Below, piece by piece: positions 3,078 to 57,349 of a stretch of 64,000 nt of DNA (position 1 is its first letter; each line of letters begins with the position of its first letter). The translations under genes were made by a program, and so were the position numbers. The stretch is taken from the IMG/VR virus record IMGVR_UViG_3300020147_000065, positions 1 through 64,000 of that record. One strand, 5' to 3'. The notes under the pieces are model-generated. The model made no database searches. It was not told where the DNA came from and worked only from the letters and a program-made list of their open reading frames with translations.

Positions 3078-3091
3078 CCTTGCCCCCCCCC

Positions 3092-3809: not shown

Positions 3810-3825
3810 TAGTCTGCCCCCCCCC

Positions 3826-3861: not shown

Positions 3862-4416
3862 ATGAGCGAACAAAAGACCACTAACTTTAAGGCCGGTGAG
3901 GACGTAATTGTTTACAGCGATTTCCTCAACCAAAGGCGACCACTGGGAAAAGCCATGCTCGACGAGCGTTTAGGCGATTACCCCACAAAGAACCAATGGG
4001 CACTCGCACAGTGGCGAGTGCGATTCTATGACGAACGCGGCAACTTGGAAACAGACGACGATAAAAAGCCTGTCTTTTCTACCATGCCGATTCTTGAAGT
4101 TGGCAAGCCAAACGAGAATCGCCCACAATCTGAGGACTATTCGCAATATGGAGCGAAGCCCGAAGCTGACGAAACTGGCGAAGTTGTTGAAAAGAAAAAG
4201 CCGGAGAAGAAAGCAGCCCCATCAACCGGCAGTCGTGGACGTGGACGCCCCGAAGTCCCAATGAATGAAATCAAGGCCCGTAACATTGTGCGACAACTCA
4301 AAGATAAAAAGCGCGATGGGCGACTTGATGAAGCTGTGGACTACCTTTTAAATGAGTGTCCAAAGGCCGCAAAATTCGTAGAAAAATACCTTGAATACCT
4401 TGACGGCAGCTTCTAA
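3862..4416 (+). CDS. hypothetical protein with AT-hook-like RGRGRP motif
   Basis: start moved to ATG 3862 behind the promoter; Lys/Glu-rich linker. Confidence 0.65.
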   Translation: MSEQKTTNFKAGEDVIVYSDFLNQRRPLGKAMLDERLGDYPTKNQWALAQWRVRFYDERGNLETDDDKKPVFSTMPILEVGKPNENRPQSEDYSQYGAKPEADETGEVVEKKKPEKKAAPSTGSRGRGRPEVPMNEIKARNIVRQLKDKKRDGRLDEAVDYLLNECPKAAKFVEKYLEYLDGSF

Positions 4417-4428
4417 TCTTGGTATAAT
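4400..4428 (+). promoter_or_regulatory. sigma70-type promoter for rIIA
   Basis: TTGACG-17-TATAAT; AGGAG RBS before ATG 4465. Confidence 0.85.
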
Positions 4429-4464
4429 TTAATTGTCACATTGAAAGGAATTTAGGAGAAAACA

Positions 4465-6636
4465 ATGAGTATTCCCATCGCTGAAAAAGAGATTGTTGTG
4501 CTGTCCAACATGGACTTTGAGAGTGCCGAAATGGGCATTGCAGAAGAAGATGTGCCGACTATCATCGCTATTCTGCGCGACAAACTTTATCGCAACAAAG
4601 AACGTGCAATCGTGCGCGAATATAGCACCAATGCGCGGGACGCAATGATTGAGTGCGATAATGGTAGTAATCCGTTTGAGGTTTGGCTACCCACGCGGTT
4701 AGACCCTGTTTTCAAAGTGCGCGACTATGGCACAGGTTTATCGGAAACTGCAATTAACCAAATCTTTCGTTTCTTGGGTAAGTCCACGAAGCGCGACAGC
4801 AATTTGGTAAACGGTCAGCTTGGCATCGGTGCGAAGTCCGGTCTTGCTCTTGCGAACCAGTTTAACGTAACGTCCTATGTGGATGGACAAGTGACCTTTT
4901 ACGTTGTTTTGAATGACCCATCGCGCAAAGGTCGCATTGATAAAATTGCAGGGCCATTACCTACTGATGAACCTAACGGCGTTTTAATCGAAGTGCCTAT
5001 CCCTGCTGCCAGCATCGAAAAAATGCACCAAGAGGCTTCGTTTGTTTACAAGTATTTCGATTTGAAACCAACGATTCACGGTTTAGACGAAAGCAAATAT
5101 CCTTTAACCCGTCCTAAACCAGTGTTGGAAGGTAAGACTTGGCGAATTGTGGGCGGCGAATCGGTTGCCATTATGGGCAACGTGGCCTATCCTATCGGTT
5201 CTGACTTCATCGTGCCGGAAGTTCACGGTGAAGAAGGCGAAAAGTGGAAGCAGTTTTTGAGTGCCGGTGTTGAGATTGACTTTCCTATCGGCTCAATCGA
5301 ATTTGCCCCATCCCGCGAAGAACTGAGCTACAACGAACATACTATCAATGTTTTAATTGATACAATCAAGTCGGCTATCAAGGAAGCTGCCGACCTGATT
5401 ACTGACAAACTGAAAAACGCGCCTAACCGTTGGGAAGCCATGTGTTTAGTTTCAGCGTTGCAAGGTGAGTTAGGTGAGTTTGGCCGTAATCTCAAATCTG
5501 TTATTGGTAAAATCCAGTGGCAAGGAAAAGAGGTAGGCAATACAATTCACGTTGGCTATAATCACAATGCCGCAACTTCGGGTTGGATGGTGCGCGAGTA
5601 TCAGAACAACACCTATACAAACCGTTTCTCTCACACCGGCAATCCTTCAAGCCTTTATGCTTCGCATAAAACACTCTTGATTGAGATTGACGATAAGAAC
5701 GGCAAAGCGCAACCGGCGAAGATGAAGTATTACTGTGAGCAGAACGGCTATGAGCGTGTATATTTGCTCTCTTTCACTTCGGCAACTGCGCGGCAACTGT
5801 TTTATAAGTCGCACTTAGAAGATATTCCTGTAATGATGCAAACGGCTTTGCCGAAAGCGCCGCCATCAAGCAGTGGTTCGGGTGGAAGCGGCCCCGTAAA
5901 CCCAAAGCATAGCTTACAGGTATTCACTTTCAACTATTCGACAAGTAGCACCGCAAGCGAATCATGGGAGCAGGAAACCGTTGATGCTGTGAACGGTAAA
6001 GGCTACTACGTTGTTATTGACCGTTTCAACGTGCAAAAGGAACACGGCACCGAACTTTACCCTAAAGACTACCTTGATACTTTGGAGTTCGCACACAAGT
6101 TGCTCGGCTTCAACTGGAAAAAGGAAACCATTATTGGTGTCAAGCGCAGTTTCTTTGACAATAAGAAACTGGGTAAGAACTGGAAACCGTTGTTTGAATA
6201 TCTGCGCGATGCTGCTAAAAAGGTGCTGGAAAAGCAAAAGCAGTTTCAGGTGGCTATTGACTACTCAGAATATATGACGCATAGGGCACAGACGTTTGAG
6301 TGCTTTCAAAAAGAGTTAGTCAATCTACAATATCCTGATGAAGCGATGGGCACTTATTTGGCCGCAGCACAAGAGGCGTATTTCCGCCACGATAAAGTGA
6401 CGAAGGGCAAGTTAAACGAGGCCAAAACCCTGTTTGATAAAATCGGCTACCCGCTTCACTACACTTACACGCCGACTTATTTGTTTTCTGACGGTGCCGA
6501 AAAGATTACAGAAAGTTACCCGCTTATGGGCGTAGTCGGAACGGGTTATTACTCGCATGGCTACGCTCAAAACGTGGAGAAGTTTATCCACTATATCAAC
6601 TTGTGCGATGCCGAAACGGTGTCCAAACGTCTGTAA
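4465..6636 (+). CDS. rIIA: rIIA-like protein with N-terminal GHKL (Hsp90-like) ATPase domain
   Basis: LYRNKERAIVREYSTNARDA, VRDYGTGLS, GQLGIGAKS motifs; 723 aa; directly followed by rIIB. Confidence 0.85.
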   Translation: MSIPIAEKEIVVLSNMDFESAEMGIAEEDVPTIIAILRDKLYRNKERAIVREYSTNARDAMIECDNGSNPFEVWLPTRLDPVFKVRDYGTGLSETAINQIFRFLGKSTKRDSNLVNGQLGIGAKSGLALANQFNVTSYVDGQVTFYVVLNDPSRKGRIDKIAGPLPTDEPNGVLIEVPIPAASIEKMHQEASFVYKYFDLKPTIHGLDESKYPLTRPKPVLEGKTWRIVGGESVAIMGNVAYPIGSDFIVPEVHGEEGEKWKQFLSAGVEIDFPIGSIEFAPSREELSYNEHTINVLIDTIKSAIKEAADLITDKLKNAPNRWEAMCLVSALQGELGEFGRNLKSVIGKIQWQGKEVGNTIHVGYNHNAATSGWMVREYQNNTYTNRFSHTGNPSSLYASHKTLLIEIDDKNGKAQPAKMKYYCEQNGYERVYLLSFTSATARQLFYKSHLEDIPVMMQTALPKAPPSSSGSGGSGPVNPKHSLQVFTFNYSTSSTASESWEQETVDAVNGKGYYVVIDRFNVQKEHGTELYPKDYLDTLEFAHKLLGFNWKKETIIGVKRSFFDNKKLGKNWKPLFEYLRDAAKKVLEKQKQFQVAIDYSEYMTHRAQTFECFQKELVNLQYPDEAMGTYLAAAQEAYFRHDKVTKGKLNEAKTLFDKIGYPLHYTYTPTYLFSDGAEKITESYPLMGVVGTGYYSHGYAQNVEKFIHYINLCDAETVSKRL

Positions 6637-6644
6637 TTAGTAGA

Positions 6645-6682
6645 GGGCTACCCTTGACAGGGTAGCCCGAAACTGGTATAAT
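6645..6682 (+). promoter_or_regulatory. sigma70 promoter with the -35 hexamer as loop of a 9-bp inverted repeat
   Basis: GGGCTACCC-TTGACA-GGGTAGCCC, TATAAT at 6677-6682 (17 nt spacer). Confidence 0.85.
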
Positions 6683-6700
6683 TTCAGTTAGGAGAAAACA

Positions 6701-7579
6701 ATGGAACAATTACCTTGCATCTATTCACCGGATAAATCCGCAACCGTGTTTTTGGGCAGCAAAGCTGTAACGGTTGTGGCCGGACAACCGCACTTCCGCG
6801 AAGTGCAGGACGCGATTATCGCGCAGGACTGGGAAGCTGTAGCCCGTTTGGTGGACGTTATCACTTCGATTAAAGCCTATTTAGTTAAAGACGGCGATTT
6901 CGAGATTTCCCGCGAAGAAATAAAATACCGCAACGAACCTGTTAAGGGTGTTATCGCTGACCGTATTTTGAGCTTCATGGAAAAGGGTTATCCTTCGGCT
7001 CCGCTTATCGAATTTCTGCGTAATTTAATGAGCAATCCGTCTTTCAACTCGCGTAATCAGCTTTACACGTTCTTAGAGCGTTGGAATCTGCCTATTACAC
7101 CAAACGGCAACTTCTTGGCTTACAAAGCCGTTCGCAATGACTACATGAGCATTGCTTCTGACCGCAATACCGGCGAACACGTTGATAACTCGATTGGTCG
7201 CGTCGTAGTTATGGACAGGGCAAAGATTGACGATAACCCGAAAAATCACTGCTCTGCCGGTTTACACGCCGGAGCCTTACAATACGTCCGTTGGTATGGT
7301 GGCATTTCTCACGGTGGAGCGATTGAAGGCGGAAACCGCGCAATCATCGTAGAGATTAACCCTGCTGACGTGGTTAGCGTTCCTAACGACCATGACTGCC
7401 AAAAGATGCGCGTCTGCAAGTATAAGGTGATTGGTGACTACATTGGCGAATTGCCTACCGATTACACCGACGCTGCCGTTTATGACGGTTATGAGGACGG
7501 TGACGAGGGCGACAGCTACGACGAGGACGATTATTGTCCTGATTGTGGCGAACCTTACGAAATCTGCAACTGTGACTAA
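6701..7579 (+). CDS. rIIB: rIIB-like protein
   Basis: PITPNGNFLAYKAVRNDY, CSAGLHAG, INPADVVSVPND, KMRVCKYKV are typical rIIB motifs. Confidence 0.9.
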   Translation: MEQLPCIYSPDKSATVFLGSKAVTVVAGQPHFREVQDAIIAQDWEAVARLVDVITSIKAYLVKDGDFEISREEIKYRNEPVKGVIADRILSFMEKGYPSAPLIEFLRNLMSNPSFNSRNQLYTFLERWNLPITPNGNFLAYKAVRNDYMSIASDRNTGEHVDNSIGRVVVMDRAKIDDNPKNHCSAGLHAGALQYVRWYGGISHGGAIEGGNRAIIVEINPADVVSVPNDHDCQKMRVCKYKVIGDYIGELPTDYTDAAVYDGYEDGDEGDSYDEDDYCPDCGEPYEICNCD

Positions 7580-7600: not shown

Positions 7601-7625
7601 GGGGAGCCTTCGGGCTTCCCTTTTT
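7601..7625 (+). terminator. intrinsic terminator
   Basis: GGGGAGCC-TTCG-GGCTTCCC followed by T5. Confidence 0.85.
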
Positions 7626-7778
7626 CTGCGCACGAGGGGGGGGGCAGACAGGAAAATGCAAACACACCACAATACTCTAAATAAACTACCCCACATTACT
7701 TTTTCAACTATTTAGCCCCAAAACATTGGAAGATGACGTTGCCGGGTAAACCGGACAAAAATAAAAAAGAGAAATACG

Positions 7779-14795: not shown

Positions 14796-15616
14796 TGTTT
14801 TTTGTTACACAACCAATTTTTATTCCTGCGGCAGACAAAGCACAGAGGTATATTGATTCCATCACCTCATTAGGTGAATACATGCGAAAGTATTATCCAA
14901 CTGATCGCCGTATTAGCTTCGCCTTCGGAGGATGGTGTTTTGATGATGAATTTTGGGGAGTAGCAGCAGCCACCATTAAAGAGTACTTTCCTGATGCTCC
15001 CTGTGTTAGATATAAAGAAAATAAAGGTAAAGCAGTTATCATCAACGATCTTTCCAGACAGTTTCTTTATGATAATCCTTACCTTATCTCCGTGGATAGC
15101 GATATTTTATTTCCTTTCTACACACCATACATGTTTGATAGACTGGATATAATGTTTCAGATGTCTCAGAAGATAAGAAAAACACCACCTGGAGTGATAG
15201 GGCTTAAACAGGATGAGAATGGTGTTCACTATCAGTCTGTTTATAGTAATCAATATGAGTATGAGACGGCCATCCACGGGGTAAATTATCGTGAGAGGTT
15301 CGTGTGGCCCAATATCCGTGGAGGCATTGGTGGCGGATGCCTTTTAATCAACGCTGAGTTATGGAAGAAGATTGGTGGATACAGAGTAATGGGAGTTTAC
15401 TCGTCTGATGACGGTAAACTCCTGTTGGATGCTCGTAATAACGGTTATTCTATACAGGTTTCTGACTCCATTTCTATTATTCATCCCATAGAAGATGATC
15501 CGACTTATGGTGTATGGAAGCGTAGAGTGTGTCAGGCTACTACTCGAACTGGTGTGAAGGCTGATATTACACAACAAATTAAAGAAGCTGATGATTTTTG
15601 GGCACGTAGACGTTGA
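14795..15616 (+). CDS. GT2-like glycosyltransferase
   Basis: ENKGKAVIIN, LISVDSDI (DxD), GGGCLLINAELWKKIGGY, YSSDD. Confidence 0.75.
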   Translation: MFFVTQPIFIPAADKAQRYIDSITSLGEYMRKYYPTDRRISFAFGGWCFDDEFWGVAAATIKEYFPDAPCVRYKENKGKAVIINDLSRQFLYDNPYLISVDSDILFPFYTPYMFDRLDIMFQMSQKIRKTPPGVIGLKQDENGVHYQSVYSNQYEYETAIHGVNYRERFVWPNIRGGIGGGCLLINAELWKKIGGYRVMGVYSSDDGKLLLDARNNGYSIQVSDSISIIHPIEDDPTYGVWKRRVCQATTRTGVKADITQQIKEADDFWARRR

Positions 15617-15660
15617 CTTACGTGCTCATTTTTGTTATACTGTACGTGAGGTACACAAAC

Positions 15661-20764: not shown

Positions 20765-22846
20765 GTGAGTTCTATAGCCGATCTAGTTTATGTTCCTTTT
20801 GCTCTTAAAGAGTTAAAGGAAGATGTTAATATAACAAACCCTGCTCCTGGTGATACCTTACAACGTAGTGCTGAAGGTAAATGGATAAACACACCTATGG
20901 AGCAATTAACTGGTGCCCAAGGACCGCAAGGTGCTCAGGGATCGGCTGGTGCTCAGGGGCCGCAAGGCTCTGCTGGTGCTCAGGGGCCGCAGGGTTATGA
21001 AGGTATAGCTGGAACACAGGGGCCGCAAGGCACACAAGGAAGACAAGGCTTTCAAGGTGTGCAGGGTGCAGTTGGTACACAGGGTACTCAGGGTATAGCC
21101 GGTGCGCAAGGTGCAACTGGTTCACAAGGTACTCAGGGAGTTCAGGGTACTCAGGGTACTCAGGGTACTCAGGGAAGACAAGGATTCCAAGGTGTGCAAG
21201 GCACACAAGGAGTACAGGGTGCCGTAGGTGTACAAGGCCCACAAGGTATAACTGGTTCTCAAGGAGAAACTGGACCACAGGGTACTCAGGGTAGTCGTGG
21301 TTATCAAGGATACCAAGGTTATCAGGGAGCCGCAGGTGCTCAAGGTGTGCAAGGTGCTGTTGGTGTAGCAGGAGATACTGGTCCACAGGGTGCTCAAGGT
21401 TCAACTGGTGCGACCGGAGCGCAAGGTCCACAGGGAACACAGGGTTCTACCGGCGCTCAGGGAACTGCTGGAATTACTGGCCCACAAGGTGTGCAGGGTG
21501 CTGCTGGAACACAAGGTCCACAAGGTTATCAAGGTGCGACCGGGGCCGGAACTCAGGGACCACAAGGTGTGCAAGGTTCTCAGGGTGTTCCCGGTGAAAG
21601 CGCGGATATTGGTGCGCAAGGTCCGCAGGGTGCGACTGGACCACAAGGTGTACAGGGTGCGACTGGACAAGGATTTAACATTGCTAAATCTTATGCATCT
21701 GTTGCCGCCCTAACTGCGGATACTAATCCTTCTGATATACTACCTGGTGAGTTTGCGATTATCTTATCCACGGTTGATGATCCAGACAACTCTAAGTTAT
21801 ATCTCTGGGACGGCGAAGATTATATTTATACCTCTGATCTTTCGGGTGCGGCAGGTATTACCGGACCACAGGGTACACAGGGAGCTACCGGAGCACAGGG
21901 TGTGCAGGGTTCTCAAGGTGTAGCCGGTGCGACTGGTCCACAAGGGGATGCCGGTGAAGCCGGTGCTGCTGGACCACAGGGTGCAGCGGGGGCACAGGGA
22001 CCGCAAGGAACTGCTGGTGCAGCCGGAGAAGCTGGTGAAGCTGGTGCCCAAGGTCCACAAGGATTTCAGGGCGCTGCCGGTGCTCAGGGAGCTACCGGAG
22101 CGCAAGGTTCTGCCGGAGCTACCGGAGCACAGGGACCACAGGGAGACGTTGGTGCTCAAGGATCAACTGGTGCTCAGGGTGCTGCGGGGGCGCAGGGCAC
22201 ACAAGGTGTAGCCGGAGCGCAGGGCGCAGCCGGAGCCGAAGGTCCGCAAGGTAATCAGGGGGCACAAGGTCCACAAGGTTATCAGGGTAGCCAAGGTGTT
22301 GCCGGTGCTCAGGGTCCGCAGGGAACACAAGGTTATCAGGGACTTACTGGTGAAGGAACACAGGGTCCGCAGGGAACACAGGGTCCGCAAGGCGCGTCAG
22401 GTGGAGGAGCAGGTGGAACGGGTGCGTCCATCTCTGTTGTTCAGAATAGTCATGGTTTCGCGGTTGGCGATGTTGTTCGTTTGAGTGGGTCAGCAACATA
22501 CACAAAAGCTTTAGCTGATTCCGCAGCAAACGCTGAAGTAGCGGGTATTGTTTCGGCTGTTGCAGATTCTAACAATTTTACTCTGAGTCTTGTCGGACAG
22601 GTAACCGGTCTAACTGGTCTTTCGGCAGAAACGCTTTACTTTCTGAGTCCAACGGTGGCCGGTGCTATGACATCTACCGAACCAACAGTCACCGGTCAAA
22701 TTAGTAAACCTGTATTTTTGGCAGACACAACAACATCAGGTTTTGTTATCACACAAATGCGCGGATACATTATATCAGATACCGGTGGTGCTGTAGGAGG
22801 ATCATCGGTGGGCGGTAATATTTATCTGAGTCGCAACTTCATTTAA
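20765..22846 (+). CDS. collagen-like (Gly-X-Y) fibre protein
   Basis: two long GXY tracts (GAQ/GPQ/GVQ) split by a globular insert; C-terminal beta domain; GTG start. Confidence 0.92.
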   Translation: MSSIADLVYVPFALKELKEDVNITNPAPGDTLQRSAEGKWINTPMEQLTGAQGPQGAQGSAGAQGPQGSAGAQGPQGYEGIAGTQGPQGTQGRQGFQGVQGAVGTQGTQGIAGAQGATGSQGTQGVQGTQGTQGTQGRQGFQGVQGTQGVQGAVGVQGPQGITGSQGETGPQGTQGSRGYQGYQGYQGAAGAQGVQGAVGVAGDTGPQGAQGSTGATGAQGPQGTQGSTGAQGTAGITGPQGVQGAAGTQGPQGYQGATGAGTQGPQGVQGSQGVPGESADIGAQGPQGATGPQGVQGATGQGFNIAKSYASVAALTADTNPSDILPGEFAIILSTVDDPDNSKLYLWDGEDYIYTSDLSGAAGITGPQGTQGATGAQGVQGSQGVAGATGPQGDAGEAGAAGPQGAAGAQGPQGTAGAAGEAGEAGAQGPQGFQGAAGAQGATGAQGSAGATGAQGPQGDVGAQGSTGAQGAAGAQGTQGVAGAQGAAGAEGPQGNQGAQGPQGYQGSQGVAGAQGPQGTQGYQGLTGEGTQGPQGTQGPQGASGGGAGGTGASISVVQNSHGFAVGDVVRLSGSATYTKALADSAANAEVAGIVSAVADSNNFTLSLVGQVTGLTGLSAETLYFLSPTVAGAMTSTEPTVTGQISKPVFLADTTTSGFVITQMRGYIISDTGGAVGGSSVGGNIYLSRNFI

Positions 22847-29654: not shown

Positions 29655-30497
29655 ATGAAATATACTAAAACCATTTCCTTAAATCTCGGAGCAGTTAACG
29701 CTGGTTTGACTTTGGAAGCCCAACCTGTTGATCAGACTGGTGCTGATTCCGGCGATCCAATTGACACTGGCTTTGTTGAACTATTCCCTGGTAACTATCT
29801 ATGGACAGGTGAATTGGAAGAAACACTCCGTGGTGCGGTTAAGTTCAAGAACATGGACACGGGCCAGTTTTATGGTGCCGTAGCCGTTGAACCTAATCCG
29901 GTTAGTGGTTTTGGTCCTTATGTGGTCACGATACTCGTAAAGAGTCTTACATCAGGATTACCTATTGCGAACGCCTCAGTACGTTTATTTAATGATACAG
30001 AGGACGTAAGCAAGACTACAGGTGTTGATGGATTAGTTTCATTAAATGTGAAATCCGGTACATTCAAACGTATAGTTAGTGCAGGTGGATTTGTAACTGT
30101 ATCTGACGAGGTTGATGTTGTAGGAGACGAGGAATTATCTGACGTATCTCTTTCAATCCAATCAATTCCTGTTGTTGAAACAGAAGGTATGACCATTGTC
30201 ACCTGTCTTGCTTCTGATTTTGGTAAACCACAAAAGAATGTGAAGTTTGTTTTGAGTTTCGAAGATAAGAGTAAGAACTTCGTTAACGGTGTATTTCAAC
30301 CTGATAAAGAACAGGAAGGTTATACAAATGCTAATGGTAGAGCCGAACTTCAAGTTTGGCCAAGCTATGTTCTTCAAGACAATGATTTTGAACCGGCAAC
30401 ATATGCCGCCTACGTGGATGGCACCTTTATAGGTAGAGTACTTGTTCCATCAGGTGGAGGAAATCTTTCTGATTTAATTATAGCGGAAGATGATTAA
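29655..30497 (+). CDS. protein with carboxypeptidase-regulatory-like (transthyretin-like) domains
   Basis: VTILVKSLTSGLPIANASVRL...TTGVDG.VSL. Confidence 0.6.
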   Translation: MKYTKTISLNLGAVNAGLTLEAQPVDQTGADSGDPIDTGFVELFPGNYLWTGELEETLRGAVKFKNMDTGQFYGAVAVEPNPVSGFGPYVVTILVKSLTSGLPIANASVRLFNDTEDVSKTTGVDGLVSLNVKSGTFKRIVSAGGFVTVSDEVDVVGDEELSDVSLSIQSIPVVETEGMTIVTCLASDFGKPQKNVKFVLSFEDKSKNFVNGVFQPDKEQEGYTNANGRAELQVWPSYVLQDNDFEPATYAAYVDGTFIGRVLVPSGGGNLSDLIIAEDD

Positions 30498-43560: not shown

Positions 43561-43599
43561 ATTATACAGCAAAAAGGGGAGGCTGTCAAGCCTCCCCTT
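43561..43599 (-). promoter_or_regulatory. terminator hairpin whose loop is the TTGACA of a sigma70 promoter
   Basis: minus strand AAGGGGAGGC-TTGACA-GCCTCCCCTT-TTT...TATAAT with 17 nt spacer. Confidence 0.85.
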
Positions 43600-51903: not shown

Positions 51904-51932
51904 TTGACGCAGGATGGCAGAAATGCTATAAT
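51904..51932 (+). promoter_or_regulatory. sigma70-type leaderless promoter
   Basis: TTGACG-17-TATAAT; ATG at 51940. Confidence 0.8.
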
Positions 51933-51939
51933 GCTGAAT

Positions 51940-52248
51940 ATGAACGAATTAGCTTTGACTTGCTTGATTTTATTTATCATGGGTGCATTGTGGGTTATTT
52001 TCAATACATTGCTTCAATACTTCGTGCTCAAAAAAGAGACACTTGGTATATTTTTAGTGGCTATATTGATTGGTTATATGTGGCCAGGAATTGCTTTTAT
52101 GTCTGTGAGTACCGTATTCACCAAAGGGGCGGACACGATTAGTGTACTTTTTATGTCCTTTGCTTTAGGTTATGCTTTCGCTATGGTAGCGGTACAAAAA
52201 ATTAATCTTGATAAAACGGTAGAGGTTCCCCGTGATCGTCGCTCTTAA
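51940..52248 (+). CDS. three-TM membrane protein
   Basis: hydrophobic helices; start reset behind promoter. Confidence 0.65.
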   Translation: MNELALTCLILFIMGALWVIFNTLLQYFVLKKETLGIFLVAILIGYMWPGIAFMSVSTVFTKGADTISVLFMSFALGYAFAMVAVQKINLDKTVEVPRDRRS

Positions 52249-54604: not shown

Positions 54605-55756
54605 ATGAAACGCACAAACATCTACCTTTCAGACGACCAAAACCGCGAATTAGAAATTCTTGCGAAAGCAGGAGTCTCTTCTGCGGAACATGTCCGCCGC
54701 GCGGTGGATGCTTATCTGCAAAGGCCACACATCAGGAGACAATTAGAAATGTCAACAACAGGCGCAACGCGCACCATCCCGTCCCGTCAATCGGCTCAAT
54801 TAGGCCCACTGACCGTTGTTTTCCATCGTACCATTCGTGTACCACAGGGAAACACTCCGTCCTCTTTACCACCAAGTCGTGGTACTTTTCCTGTCTACAA
54901 GGTTTCTGATCTGGGTTCACTTGCTCTTCCACAGTGGGATCGTGAAGGTTACGTGATTCCTATCAAGGAAACCGAAGCAATGTGGATGGCATTCTCATGT
55001 GCATGGGACAAGCAACCCGTTGCTGTCGCCATCGGTGCTGGTGGAATCAACGCTGTCTCTGGTGAGAAGATGAGCAGGAAGCTTCAAGAGGATGGATATT
55101 TAGTAACTCCACCTCAACCCTGGCTTGATGGGTTTAAGTCACCAGATGGTCATGTTTATCAGTTTGTGGGAACAGAACATAAGGGCGGCGAAGGTCATAC
55201 CGTAGCCGAACAGATTATCGGTGAAGAGTCGGTTTCTGGCGGTCTTGCTTTCTCTGTTTATGAAGCAAAGGAGGGCGCCATTGTTGTTCCCAAACCCTCA
55301 ACACATCTTGAATGCTTTACTATGTCTATGGATAGTGACATTAAAAGTTTCTCTCCGGCAGCAGCATCTTTATCTTCGTCTCCAAGACGTATGAGAATGA
55401 TGCGTGGTAATGAATACAGTCAACCAGACGTTCAGAAATGTGCAACGCGTGGGCCTGTGGAAATGGGTCTTGGACGTGGTGGAGCTATCGAACAGAAGGT
55501 TTATCCTGATCCTCACGGATTATCCGCGTGGAAGGCCGAACCATCTGCTGTTGCTGTAGTATATCTTATTAGTGAACGTGAGTTTAATGCTCTTCTTGGG
55601 CTACCCACGGGTGACGTTGCTTCTACAGACAATACTTCTGGACCATACTTCAAAACTCAGGATAAACATCTTGCCGACACAGAAGGCAGCGAGAAATTCG
55701 AGAAAGTCAAAGCTGTTCCAGTCGGTGCGAAAGCTAAGCTCTTTCCGGGTGACTAA
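54605..55756 (+). CDS. ribbon-helix-helix domain fused to a conserved uncharacterised domain
   Basis: MKRTNIYLSDDQ...SAEHVRRAVDAYL (RHH); FHRTIRVP, LPPSRGTFP, EAMW, PQPWLDG, TVAEQ..GEE..GG; internal AGGAG + ATG 54749. Confidence 0.75.
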   Translation: MKRTNIYLSDDQNRELEILAKAGVSSAEHVRRAVDAYLQRPHIRRQLEMSTTGATRTIPSRQSAQLGPLTVVFHRTIRVPQGNTPSSLPPSRGTFPVYKVSDLGSLALPQWDREGYVIPIKETEAMWMAFSCAWDKQPVAVAIGAGGINAVSGEKMSRKLQEDGYLVTPPQPWLDGFKSPDGHVYQFVGTEHKGGEGHTVAEQIIGEESVSGGLAFSVYEAKEGAIVVPKPSTHLECFTMSMDSDIKSFSPAAASLSSSPRRMRMMRGNEYSQPDVQKCATRGPVEMGLGRGGAIEQKVYPDPHGLSAWKAEPSAVAVVYLISEREFNALLGLPTGDVASTDNTSGPYFKTQDKHLADTEGSEKFEKVKAVPVGAKAKLFPGD

Positions 55757-56988: not shown

Positions 56989-57063
56989 AACGTCCTGTTT
57001 GTGGAAAATACCCAAACAGGACGTTCTTTTTAGCTTGACAAAAAGCCCGGAAACCGCTATAAT
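56989..57063 (+). promoter_or_regulatory. terminator followed by leaderless sigma70 promoter
   Basis: AACGTCCTGTTT / AAACAGGACGTT + CTTTTT; TTGACA 57035-17-TATAAT 57058; ATG 57071. Confidence 0.85.
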
Positions 57064-57070
57064 TTAATAC

Positions 57071-57349
57071 ATGATCGAGATTAGATTCAGAGACTACCCC
57101 GAAGATAACTTCGATTCTTTTTATGATTTCCCCACAAAAACGGAAGCCATCAGTTGGTGGAATACGTTCTTAGCTGAGAAAAAAGAATCTGGAGCAGAAG
57201 TTACTGTCTTCAAGGAGTGGCCCGAAGATGAAGATACCCTAAAGTCTTTGGGTTTAAATTCTCCCACCTTTGGTGGCGAGTTTATGAAAGGGTATTGTAT
57301 AACCGGAGGAGAAAAGGCATTATGGGTGCTAATACTGTCATTACAGTAG
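57071..57349 (+). CDS. hypothetical protein
   Basis: leaderless ORF. Confidence 0.65.
   Translation: MIEIRFRDYPEDNFDSFYDFPTKTEAISWWNTFLAEKKESGAEVTVFKEWPEDEDTLKSLGLNSPTFGGEFMKGYCITGGEKALWVLILSLQ

What the first reader, a model, noticed from the sequence alone, without database searches (positions are those of the whole stretch)
6645..6682. Promoter whose TTGACA is exactly the loop of a perfect hairpin (rIIA-rIIB junction)
Seen: GGGCTACCC-TTGACA-GGGTAGCCC, then TATAAT at canonical 17-nt spacing. The -35 hexamer is the entire 6-nt loop. Inference: in RNA it is a terminator or processing stem for rIIA; in DNA it could extrude as a cruciform or serve as a symmetric operator that gates rIIB transcription. 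The arms (GCTACCC/GGGTAGC) also resemble the flank of the dispersed motif.
Basis: partly seen in the sequence, partly recalled or inferred. Interest (0 to 1): 0.62.

Follow-up and report, generated by a model that had tools for sequence, protein, structure and literature searches.

The report
Hairpin-wrapped early promoter before rIIB
A textbook bacterial-type promoter for the phage gene rIIB has its -35 box in the loop of a perfect 10-bp hairpin; this is one copy of a space-saving "stem-loop plus promoter" cassette that this uncultured soil phage uses repeatedly and that is already known from T4-like phages, so it is real but not a new kind of switch.

Summary
GGGCTACCC (6645-6653), TTGACA (6654-6659) and GGGTAGCCC (6660-6668) are followed by a 17-nt spacer with TG, then TATAAT (6677-6682). 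All of this lies in the 64-nt gap between rIIA and rIIB.

The genome is a 221-kb uncultured soil phage. It has about 60 near-consensus sigma70-type promoters. Three of the 62 best carry a perfect stem of 8 bp or more bracketing the -35 (expected 0.002), and two weaker promoters do the same. Three of these five siblings have a T-run after the stem, so they are true terminators overlapping a promoter. The rIIA/rIIB copy has no T-run (tail score 0.11 against 4.0 or more).

The stems differ in sequence between sites. The nearest relative (47% rIIB identity) has a different stem around TTGACA at the same junction. This argues for a structure and against a sequence-specific operator.

Best reading: a PeSL-like composite cassette (Arbiol 2010; Comeau 2014). 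As DNA it is an early promoter for rIIB. As RNA from the rIIA promoter it is a 3' stem-loop that attenuates or stabilises but lets read-through pass. Cruciform or operator gating is unsupported. No RNA data exist. Interest is modest; the genome-wide poly-C promoter cassettes noticed in passing are more unusual.

The parts
4400..4428 (+). Promoter of rIIA (TTGACG-N17-TATAAT, 11/12, with TG). It is the source of transcripts that would carry the hairpin as RNA.
4465..6636 (+). rIIA ORF (723 aa), stop TAA at 6634-6636
   Evidence: PHROGs phrog_612, E=4e-96
6636..6641 (+). 5' strand of a predicted weak outer helix. It pairs with 6672-6677 and includes two G.U pairs.
   Evidence: MFE and centroid
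6645..6653 (+). 5' arm of the hairpin (GGGCTACCC). Its last three bases, CCC, are the promoter-family consensus upstream of the -35.
6654..6659 (+). -35 hexamer TTGACA, which is the hairpin loop. T6654 and A6659 can close it to a 4-nt UGAC loop.
6660..6668 (+). 3' arm of the hairpin (GGGTAGCCC). It occupies the first 9 nt of the 17-nt spacer.
6674..6682 (+). Extended -10: TG (6674-6675), G, then TATAAT (6677-6682)
6689..6690 (+). Inferred transcription start of the rIIB mRNA. This is a prediction; it has not been observed.
   Evidence: Inferred from the ATG phasing 6-7 nt after the -10 in 20 of 62 sibling promoters. No RNA runs exist.
6690..6694 (+). Shine-Dalgarno AGGAG. The 16-nt ribosome-binding block at 6688-6703 is identical to the one before rIIA (4452-4467).
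6701..7579 (+). rIIB ORF (292 aa)
   Evidence: PHROGs phrog_609, E=1e-60; PF26926 precomputed
7601..7625 (+). Canonical intrinsic terminator after rIIB: 8-bp stem, TTCG loop, T5 (tail score 4.0)
43561..43599 (-). Sibling cassette: an 11-bp stem around TTGACA, then T5, then TATAAT. A terminator overlapping a 12/12 promoter.
15599..15641 (+). Sibling cassette: an 11-bp stem (two G.U pairs on the sense strand) around TTGACT, then T5, then TATACT. The upstream ORF's TGA stop (15614-15616) lies inside the -35.

Best explanation
This is a compact composite cassette that is read in two ways.

(1) As duplex DNA it is a consensus sigma70-type early promoter with an extended -10. It would start an rIIB mRNA at about 6689-6690, with an 11-12-nt leader that begins at the Shine-Dalgarno sequence.

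(2) As RNA it exists only in transcripts that start at the rIIA promoter (4400). There it folds into a 10-bp G+C-rich stem-loop 9 nt after the rIIA stop codon. Because no U-tract follows, it is not a full terminator. It most likely acts as a leaky attenuator and/or a barrier to 3' exonucleases, marking the end of the rIIA cistron. Read-through continues into rIIB and stops at the real terminator at 7601.

The -35 sits in the loop for reasons of space. The gap is 64 nt, and 47 nt are needed from the -35 to the ATG, so a 24-nt hairpin can only fit if it straddles the -35. The family's conserved CCC before TTGACA already supplies the inner part of the 5' arm.

Shown: the sequence anatomy, the non-random recurrence of the design, the different stems at different sites, and the lack of a T-run.
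Inferred: promoter activity, the start site, and what the RNA stem does.
For: - The anatomy is exact. The fold is stable and far better than shuffles.
- The promoter belongs to a coherent family of about 60. The family shows reading-frame phasing: ATG 6-7 nt after the -10 in 20 of 62. This argues that they are real promoters.
- The same -35-in-loop design recurs at 43589(-), 67802, 15613 and 205724, with a short version at 196724(-). Observed 3 against 0.002 expected.
- Three siblings carry T5-T6 tails scoring 4.0 or more, so there the stem is a terminator for the co-oriented upstream gene. In two of them the upstream gene's TGA stop lies inside the -35.
- Stem sequences are unrelated between sites. 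The nearest relative, L002 (47% rIIB identity, 28% over the rIIA C-terminus), has GGGGC-TTGACAAAA-GCCCC followed by TAAAAT at the same junction. Complementarity is conserved; sequence is not.
- Hairpins in this genome behave as sense-strand RNA elements. Loops are TTCG 11 times and CGAA never. The 15613 sibling uses two G.U pairs on the sense strand.
- About 22 of 61 strong promoters have a stable hairpin within 70 nt upstream or overlapping them.
- Published precedent: PeSLs of phages phi1/RB49 combine a strong sigma70 promoter with a stem-loop that can overlap the -35. A PeSL stem-loop cut lacZ expression as much as the rrnB T1 terminator (PMC2839356). My scan of phi1 shows that the predominant PeSL stems sit in the promoter spacer with no T-run after them, and found two -35-bracketing stems.
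Against: - No U-tract follows the stem (tail score 0.11, below the random mean of 0.81), so termination is not predicted by the standard model.
- No RNA data exist for this phage, so neither the start site nor any 3' end has been observed.
- The palindrome is perfect. This copy alone therefore cannot distinguish RNA from DNA structure, or one strand from the other.
- Only one relative shows the design. Of 69 distinct rIIB-upstream junctions in relatives, 18 have a promoter of 10/12 or better. Seventeen of those 18 have no stem around the -35. The stem is therefore not needed for an rIIB promoter.
- The host and its RNA polymerase are unknown.
Confidence: 0.6

Rival explanations
1. The hairpin is an efficient terminator or a processing site, not a leaky one. 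The host polymerase might terminate at U-less stems, or the 10-bp stem plus outer helix (about 16 bp with an internal loop) might be cut by an RNase III-type enzyme. In that case rIIA and rIIB would be separate transcription units.
For: - A PeSL stem-loop reduced reporter expression as strongly as rrnB T1 (PMC2839356), and the predominant phi1 PeSL stems have no T-run after them.
- In this genome only 21 of 180 perfect hairpins have a T-run, so U-less stems are the rule.
- An outer helix is predicted both in the window and in L002.
Against: - The phage does use canonical T-run terminators where it apparently wants a full stop. Examples are directly after rIIB at 7601 and at three sibling cassettes.
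- The tail here scores below random.
- The outer helix is weak, with two G.U pairs, and adds little energy.
Confidence: 0.15
2. The palindrome has no function of its own. It is a by-product of how promoter cassettes arise and recombine, for example a decayed T-run terminator/promoter cassette, and is carried along because it does no harm.
For: - Seventeen of 18 rIIB junction promoters in relatives work without such a stem.
- The 3' half of the spacer (CCCGAAACTGG) follows the family's spacer tendencies.
- PeSL-type cassettes are thought to move by recombination.
Against: - A perfect 9-10-bp stem with no mismatch is unlikely to persist without selection.
- The excess of -35-bracketing stems is large (3 against 0.002).
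- A distant relative keeps complementarity with a different sequence at the same junction.
Confidence: 0.13
3. The inverted repeat is a symmetric operator. A dimeric DNA-binding protein sits on the two 9-bp half-sites and covers the -35, switching the rIIB promoter off.
For: The half-sites are perfect 9-bp repeats with a 6-bp centre lying exactly over the -35. That geometry is compatible with a dimeric repressor.
Against: - The half-site does not recur as an inverted pair anywhere else in the window. The only other exact copy (55598) is a lone half-site inside surrounding unrelated sequence.
- The four sibling -35-in-loop sites and the L002 homologue have unrelated stem sequences and different loop lengths. 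What is shared is self-complementarity, not a recognition sequence.
- No candidate regulator was identified.
Confidence: 0.05
4. This is a DNA cruciform or supercoiling gate. Under negative supercoiling, for example behind polymerases coming from the rIIA promoter, the palindrome extrudes. That puts the -35 in a single-stranded loop and silences the promoter.
For: The palindrome is perfect and centred on the -35. The single-strand DNA fold is -11.9 kcal/mol.
Against: - By established knowledge, extrusion in vivo favours longer arms and A+T-rich centres. This one has 9-10-bp G+C-rich arms.
- One sibling stem (15613) needs G.U pairs, which are C.A mismatches on the other DNA strand, so at least that cruciform would be imperfect.
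- The genome's hairpins show sense-strand RNA signatures: TTCG loops 11, CGAA 0.
Confidence: 0.05

Closest known systems
PeSL (promoter-early stem-loop) cassettes of T4-like phages phi1/RB49, PST/T4 and nt-1/KVP40 (Arbiol et al. 2010, PMC2839356; Comeau et al. 2014, PMC4122927)
   Same: - It is a near-consensus sigma70 promoter fused to a stable stem-loop, in the short gap between one gene's stop codon and the next gene's SD/ATG.
- Such cassettes are repeated many times in the genome.
- The stem-loop position varies, and 'overlapping the -35' is a described subclass.
- In phi1 I found two stems bracketing TTGACA, at 29795 and 9660. The predominant PeSL stems there have no T-run after them.
   Different: - There is no sequence homology.
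- The phage is not T4-like: no Gp23 match was found (though that search's own control also found nothing, so this alone is inconclusive), DNA polymerase 38% or less and terminase 26% or less to any cultured phage.
- The region upstream of the -35 is C-rich (CCC, up to C8-11 in the second promoter class), not A+T-rich.
- This copy sits between two conserved genes (rIIA/rIIB), not among ORFans.
- Here the loop is exactly the -35 hexamer.
- Recombination or mini-circle behaviour could not be examined.
T4 rIIA-rIIB transcription (own knowledge, not tested here): rIIB is read both from the upstream rIIA early transcript and from its own promoters at the end of rIIA
   Same: There is an internal promoter for rIIB at the rIIA/rIIB junction as well as read-through from rIIA. 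Of 69 related junctions, 18 also carry a sigma70-like promoter.
   Different: In T4 the internal rIIB promoters are MotA-dependent middle promoters. Here it is a plain consensus -35/-10 promoter wrapped in a hairpin. In phi1 the rIIA and rIIB genes are not adjacent in the record.
Intrinsic (Rho-independent) terminators overlapping a downstream promoter
   Same: Three sibling cassettes in this genome (43589 minus strand, 67802, 15613) are exactly this. The stem surrounds the -35, the T-run fills the rest of the 17-nt spacer, and the -10 follows.
   Different: The rIIA/rIIB copy lacks the U-tract that defines the class.
Stable intercistronic hairpins of T4 mRNAs, such as C(UUCG)G tetraloop stems (own knowledge: Tuerk et al. 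1988)
   Same: These are G+C-rich stems between cistrons that act in the RNA. The genome is rich in TTCG-loop stems on the sense strand.
   Different: The loop here is UUGACA/UGAC, not a special tetraloop, and the stem doubles as promoter DNA.

Membership tests
PeSL-type composite promoter/stem-loop cassette | Strong sigma70-like (early) promoter | tested here: met
   12/12 match with 17-nt spacer and TG extension. It fits the genome's family consensus. Activity itself was not measured.
PeSL-type composite promoter/stem-loop cassette | Stable stem-loop adjacent to or overlapping the promoter (five positional subclasses, including overlap with the -35) | tested here: met
   A 10-bp stem at -20.2 kcal/mol with the loop equal to the -35. 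The subclass is described in PMC2839356 and was seen in phi1 at 29795 and 9660.
PeSL-type composite promoter/stem-loop cassette | Lies between the stop codon of the upstream gene and the SD/ATG of a co-oriented downstream gene | tested here: met
   TAA at 6634-6636, SD at 6690-6694, ATG at 6701. Both genes are on the + strand.
PeSL-type composite promoter/stem-loop cassette | Many copies per genome, concentrated among small variable ORFs | tested here: met
   About 22 of 61 strong promoters have a nearby or overlapping hairpin. About 70-85 hairpin-polyC-promoter cassettes lie in front of small ORFs at 155-220 kb. This particular copy, however, lies between conserved genes.
PeSL-type composite promoter/stem-loop cassette | A+T-rich tract upstream of the -35 (an accessory part of the published motif, not its definition) | tested here: not met
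   The positions just upstream of the -35 are C-rich (C at -36 in 51 of 59). There is only a mild A excess around -52 to -55.
PeSL-type composite promoter/stem-loop cassette | The stem-loop attenuates or terminates upstream transcription (shown by reporter assay in phi1) | not testable with these tools
   No RNA runs hold this phage. The tail score argues against classical termination.
PeSL-type composite promoter/stem-loop cassette | Cassettes serve as recombination points (indels between close relatives, mini-circles) | not testable with these tools
   No close relative is available: none in INPHARED or IMG/VR, and the best rIIB relative is 50% or less identical. The second soil sample is identical over the parts it covers.
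PeSL-type composite promoter/stem-loop cassette | Host genome is a T4-like myovirus (the range described so far, not a mechanistic requirement) | tested here: inconclusive
   No Gp23 (PF07068) match, but the same search also found nothing in its control genomes, so it does not show absence. DNA polymerase is 38% or less and terminase 26% or less identical to cultured phages, none of them T4-like.
Intrinsic (Rho-independent) terminator | G+C-rich hairpin | tested here: met
Intrinsic (Rho-independent) terminator | U-rich tract directly after the stem | tested here: not met
   The tail GAAACTGG... scores 0.11. It scores 1.07 even after the outer helix. Random mean 0.81, 99th percentile 3.17; bona fide sites in this genome score 4.0-4.6.
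Palindromic operator of a dimeric repressor | A sequence-specific half-site that recurs at co-regulated promoters or is conserved in relatives | tested here: not met
   No second inverted pair in the window. Sibling and orthologous stems differ in sequence.

The most novel reading that the evidence does not exclude
The -35-in-loop geometry could be a transcription-coupled switch rather than mere compaction. Passage of polymerase from the rIIA promoter, or the supercoiling it leaves behind, would transiently extrude the palindrome, or let the nascent RNA stem pause polymerase over the -10. The internal rIIB promoter would then fire only when upstream transcription is low. This would make the rIIA:rIIB ratio self-adjusting. 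The same device would be reused at the other -35-in-loop sites.
Probability: 0.07. Interest if true: 0.7.

Novelty: new member of a known kind. Interest (0 to 1): 0.3.

Why it matters
This shows that the composite promoter/stem-loop cassette described so far only in T4-like coliphages and vibriophages also exists, built independently, in a very distant uncultured soil phage. Here it is pushed to its most compact form. The -35 hexamer is the hairpin loop, and in two sibling cases that hexamer also contains the upstream gene's stop codon.

For rII biology, it says that rIIB has its own strong promoter in this lineage, as in about a quarter of related junctions. For annotation, it warns that a hairpin without a T-run in this genome should not be called a terminator.

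It does not open a new mechanism. The more unusual feature of the genome is the roughly 70-90-fold repeated hairpin / TG-polyC / TTGC promoter / leaderless-ATG cassette.

Tried and rejected
- Near-identical phages: megablast of 6000-7400 against INPHARED gave no match. rIIB against IMG/VR found no relative. A comparison of close strains for compensatory changes was therefore impossible.
- Pfam scan of rIIA and rIIB: no family in this copy of Pfam. PHROGs identified both.
- Expression data: only two DNA soil metagenome runs hold the stretch, and no RNA run does. Laying their contigs showed identity only, with no ends or variants.
- Rfam at E<=1 on 6300-7000: nothing.
- Literature searches for a '-35 hexamer in a terminator loop' or 'terminator overlaps promoter' gave nothing beyond the PeSL papers.
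- Search for the half-site elsewhere as an operator: only a lone exact copy at 55598, inside surrounding unrelated sequence. Rejected.
- Other hairpins with TTGAC-like loops were examined and rejected as promoters because they lack a -10 and/or lie in coding sequence: 183273, 6155 (inside rIIA), 45094, 119803, 154498, 215234 and 74875.
- G.T versus A.C mismatch asymmetry in imperfect stems: 7 against 1 in 155-196 kb, but 3 against 1 the wrong way in 100-150 kb. The numbers are too small to use as evidence.
- The in-frame TGA of the -35 seven codons after the rIIA stop (also in frame in L002) was considered as a relic of a longer rIIA. It is compatible with chance (1 in 3 each) and was not pursued.
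- My window-based hairpin census missed odd-length hairpins such as the one at 205724, so its class counts are lower bounds.

Full report
**1. The observation**

- The 5' arm GGGCTACCC is at 6645-6653, TTGACA at 6654-6659 and the 3' arm GGGTAGCCC at 6660-6668.
- A 17-nt spacer follows, then TATAAT at 6677-6682.
- T6674-G6675 adds an extended -10.
- The first and last bases of the hexamer can pair, so the RNA fold is a 10-bp stem with a UGAC loop. It folds at -20.2 kcal/mol, z=-5.35, with 0 of 200 shuffles as good.
- A weak outer helix, 6636-6641 with 6672-6677, is also predicted.

The element fills most of the 64-nt gap between a 723-aa ORF (4465-6636) and a 292-aa ORF (6701-7579). PHROGs identifies these as RIIA (E=4e-96) and RIIB (E=1e-60).

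A contig from a second soil metagenome run covers 6556-6706 without any difference. The sequence is therefore not an assembly artefact.

**2. The genome**

- The window is the first 64 kb of a 221,108-bp virus record at 43.8% G+C.
- The record's two ends overlap by about 187 nt, so it closes into a circle.
- It has no close relative among cultured phages. rIIA is 34% or less identical, DNA polymerase 38% or less and terminase 26% or less.
- No T4-type capsid protein match was found, but that search's own control also found nothing, so this point is inconclusive.
- It carries 36 tRNA genes.
- The host is unknown.

**3. Is it more than chance?**

Perfect TTGACA-N15-19-TATAAT occurs five times in the window against 0.03 expected.

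Genome-wide there are 62 promoters scoring 11/12 or better. They share features that were not part of the search.
- C lies directly before the -35 in 51 of 59.
- CC often precedes that C.
- TGg lies before the -10.

In 20 of the 62, an ATG that opens an ORF of 40 codons or more sits exactly 6-7 nt after the -10. This phasing is hard to explain unless these are real promoters that make leaderless, or nearly leaderless, mRNAs. It places the rIIB start at about 6689-6690, on the first base of the Shine-Dalgarno AGGAG. rIIB belongs to a second group with the ATG 18-22 nt after the -10.

The genome also has 180 perfect hairpins (8 bp or more) against about 21 expected.

The decisive test swapped upstream and downstream flanks between promoters. 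This null expects 0.002 promoters with a perfect stem of 8 bp or more bracketing the -35. Three are observed: 6654, 43589 on the minus strand and 205724. A 5-bp case lies at 196724. Two slightly weaker promoters, at 67802 and 15613, have the same design.

**4. What the siblings say**

Three siblings look like classical intrinsic terminators: 43589(-), 67802 and 15613.
- In each, the 3' arm is followed by T5-T6, which fills the rest of the 17-nt spacer. Their tail scores are 4.0-4.6, against a random mean of 0.81.
- Each stands behind a co-oriented gene.
- In two of them the upstream gene's TGA stop codon lies inside the -35 hexamer.
- In these three, stop codon, terminator and next promoter are nested in about 45 nt.

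The other three copies have no T-run. The rIIA/rIIB copy scores 0.11, 205724 (behind a tRNA-Arg gene) scores 0.07, and the L002 homologue scores 0.24.

The phage places a canonical terminator directly after rIIB, at 7601-7625 (score 4.0). The missing T-run between rIIA and rIIB therefore looks like a choice for read-through rather than an inability to terminate.

**5. Structure or sequence?**

The stems at the different sites have unrelated sequences. The arm sequence does not recur as a pair elsewhere in the window.

Among rIIB relatives, all 50% or less identical, I examined 69 distinct junctions.
- Eighteen have a sigma70-like promoter of 10/12 or better in front of rIIB.
- Only the nearest relative, L002 (47% rIIB identity, 28% over the rIIA C-terminus), has a stem around the -35.
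- Its stem is GGGGC, then TTGACAAAA, then GCCCC, followed by TAAAAT 17 nt after the -35. The stem sequence and loop length differ, but the design and the junction are the same.

This is what a structural element predicts. It is not what a protein-recognition sequence predicts.

Hairpins in this genome behave as sense-strand RNA elements in general. Eleven 4-nt loops are TTCG and none is CGAA. The 15613 sibling relies on two G.U pairs. This favours RNA over a DNA cruciform, although the perfect palindrome at 6645-6668 cannot decide that for itself.

**6. Mechanism proposed**

One piece of DNA is read in two ways. As duplex DNA it is an early promoter for rIIB. As RNA it is present only in transcripts coming from the rIIA promoter at 4400. 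There it forms a stable stem-loop 9 nt after the rIIA stop codon, which attenuates weakly and/or blocks 3' exonucleases. Polymerase runs on into rIIB and stops at 7601.

The geometry follows from space. From the -35 to the ATG takes 47 of the 64 nt available, so a 24-nt hairpin must straddle the -35. The family's CCC before TTGACA is already half of the inner stem.

Confidence is about 0.6. Promoter activity, the start site and the RNA role are all inferred, because no RNA data exist.

**7. Comparison with what is known**

The closest known system is the PeSL (promoter-early stem-loop) of T4-like phages.
- It combines a strong sigma70 promoter with a stem-loop, lies between genes and is repeated across the genome.
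- Five positional subclasses are described, including overlap with the -35.
- Promoter and terminator activities were shown by reporter assays (PMC2839356; PMC4122927).

I scanned phi1 (EF437941) with the same script. Most of its stems lie in the spacer and have no T-run after them. Two bracket TTGACA, at 29795 and 9660.

The present element works like a PeSL and meets its two defining features. It differs in four ways.
- It has a C-rich rather than an A+T-rich upstream region.
- Its host phage does not look T4-like.
- It sits between conserved genes.
- It shares no sequence with the published cassettes.

It is also not an intrinsic terminator, since the U-tract test fails. It shows no sign of being an operator.

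**8. Verdict**

The terminator label does not fit this copy. Gating by cruciform or operator is unsupported.

It is a new member of a known kind of element, of modest interest (0.3). The most novel reading not excluded is a transcription-coupled switch on the -35, with a probability of about 0.07.

Noticed in passing
Whole genome; in the window at 3083-3091 and 3817-3825 (+) and 7636-7644 (as G9 on +). Densest at 155-195 kb and 206-220 kb (loci L013-L016).: There is a second, very abundant promoter class. The genome has 99 runs of C7-11. Of these, 96 are preceded by TG, 77 are followed at once by TTG (mostly TTGC), and 69 have a TAnnnT 16-18 nt later. 54 have an ATG 5-8 nt after that, and 85 are preceded by a stable hairpin without a T-run. 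That amounts to one cassette per small ORF, nearly all on the + strand. The poly-C might be a factor-binding box replacing a good -35, or a Rho-loading site on read-through RNA. This was not tested.
   Followed up: partly
Genome-wide; for example window 57035-57073, 51904-51942 and 34551-34515 (-): In 20 of 62 strong promoters, the ATG of an ORF of 40 codons or more lies exactly 6-7 nt after the -10 (16 at exactly 7). This implies many leaderless early mRNAs, which is unusual for a phage with otherwise strong Shine-Dalgarno sites.
   Followed up: partly
L015:11374-20000 and L016:71-12555 (genome about 195.4-216.6 kb): There are 36 tRNA genes. They include anticodons CTA (called Pyl by ARAGORN, i.e. 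an amber reader) and TCA (called SeC, i.e. an opal reader). These may be suppressor tRNAs. No evidence of stop-codon recoding was looked for.
   Followed up: no
window 4452-4467 and 6688-6703: rIIA and rIIB have the identical 16-nt translation start block TTAGGAGAAAACAATG.
   Followed up: no
window 15614-15616; genome 67803-67805 (L009:3803-3805): The TGA stop codon of the upstream ORF lies inside the -35 hexamer, which is itself the loop of a T-run terminator. Three signals are nested in one hexamer.
   Followed up: yes
Promoter spacers genome-wide, e.g. 205063, 199271(-), 209861, 202039(-), 92048(-), window 57035: Many promoter spacers share a CCCGTGG(A/T)AA-like motif (C-rich at spacer positions 4-6, A-rich at 10-12, C avoided at position 10). 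The rIIB spacer's GCCCGAAACTGG and L002's GCCCCGAAGTTCAG fit it loosely. Its meaning is unknown.
   Followed up: partly
genome 1-187 and 220923-221108: The two contig ends are identical apart from a C11 versus C10 run. The record is therefore a closed circle (about 220.9 kb), although it is classed 'linear, 89% complete'. It also shows that the poly-C run lengths are uncertain or heterogeneous.
   Followed up: yes
whole genome: Only 21 of 180 perfect hairpins (8 bp or more) are followed by a T-run, and 44 are followed by poly-C. Loops are TTCG 11 times and CGAA never. Most hairpins are therefore sense-strand RNA elements other than classical terminators.
   Followed up: partly
window 20765-22846 (+): A 693-aa ORF has many collagen-like tail-fibre repeat matches in PHROGs.
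   Followed up: no
L006:2017-3362 and L007:259-1604 (metagenome relatives): In one group of relatives, the gene directly upstream of rIIB is a 157-aa sigma-70 region 2/4 protein rather than rIIA.
   Followed up: no
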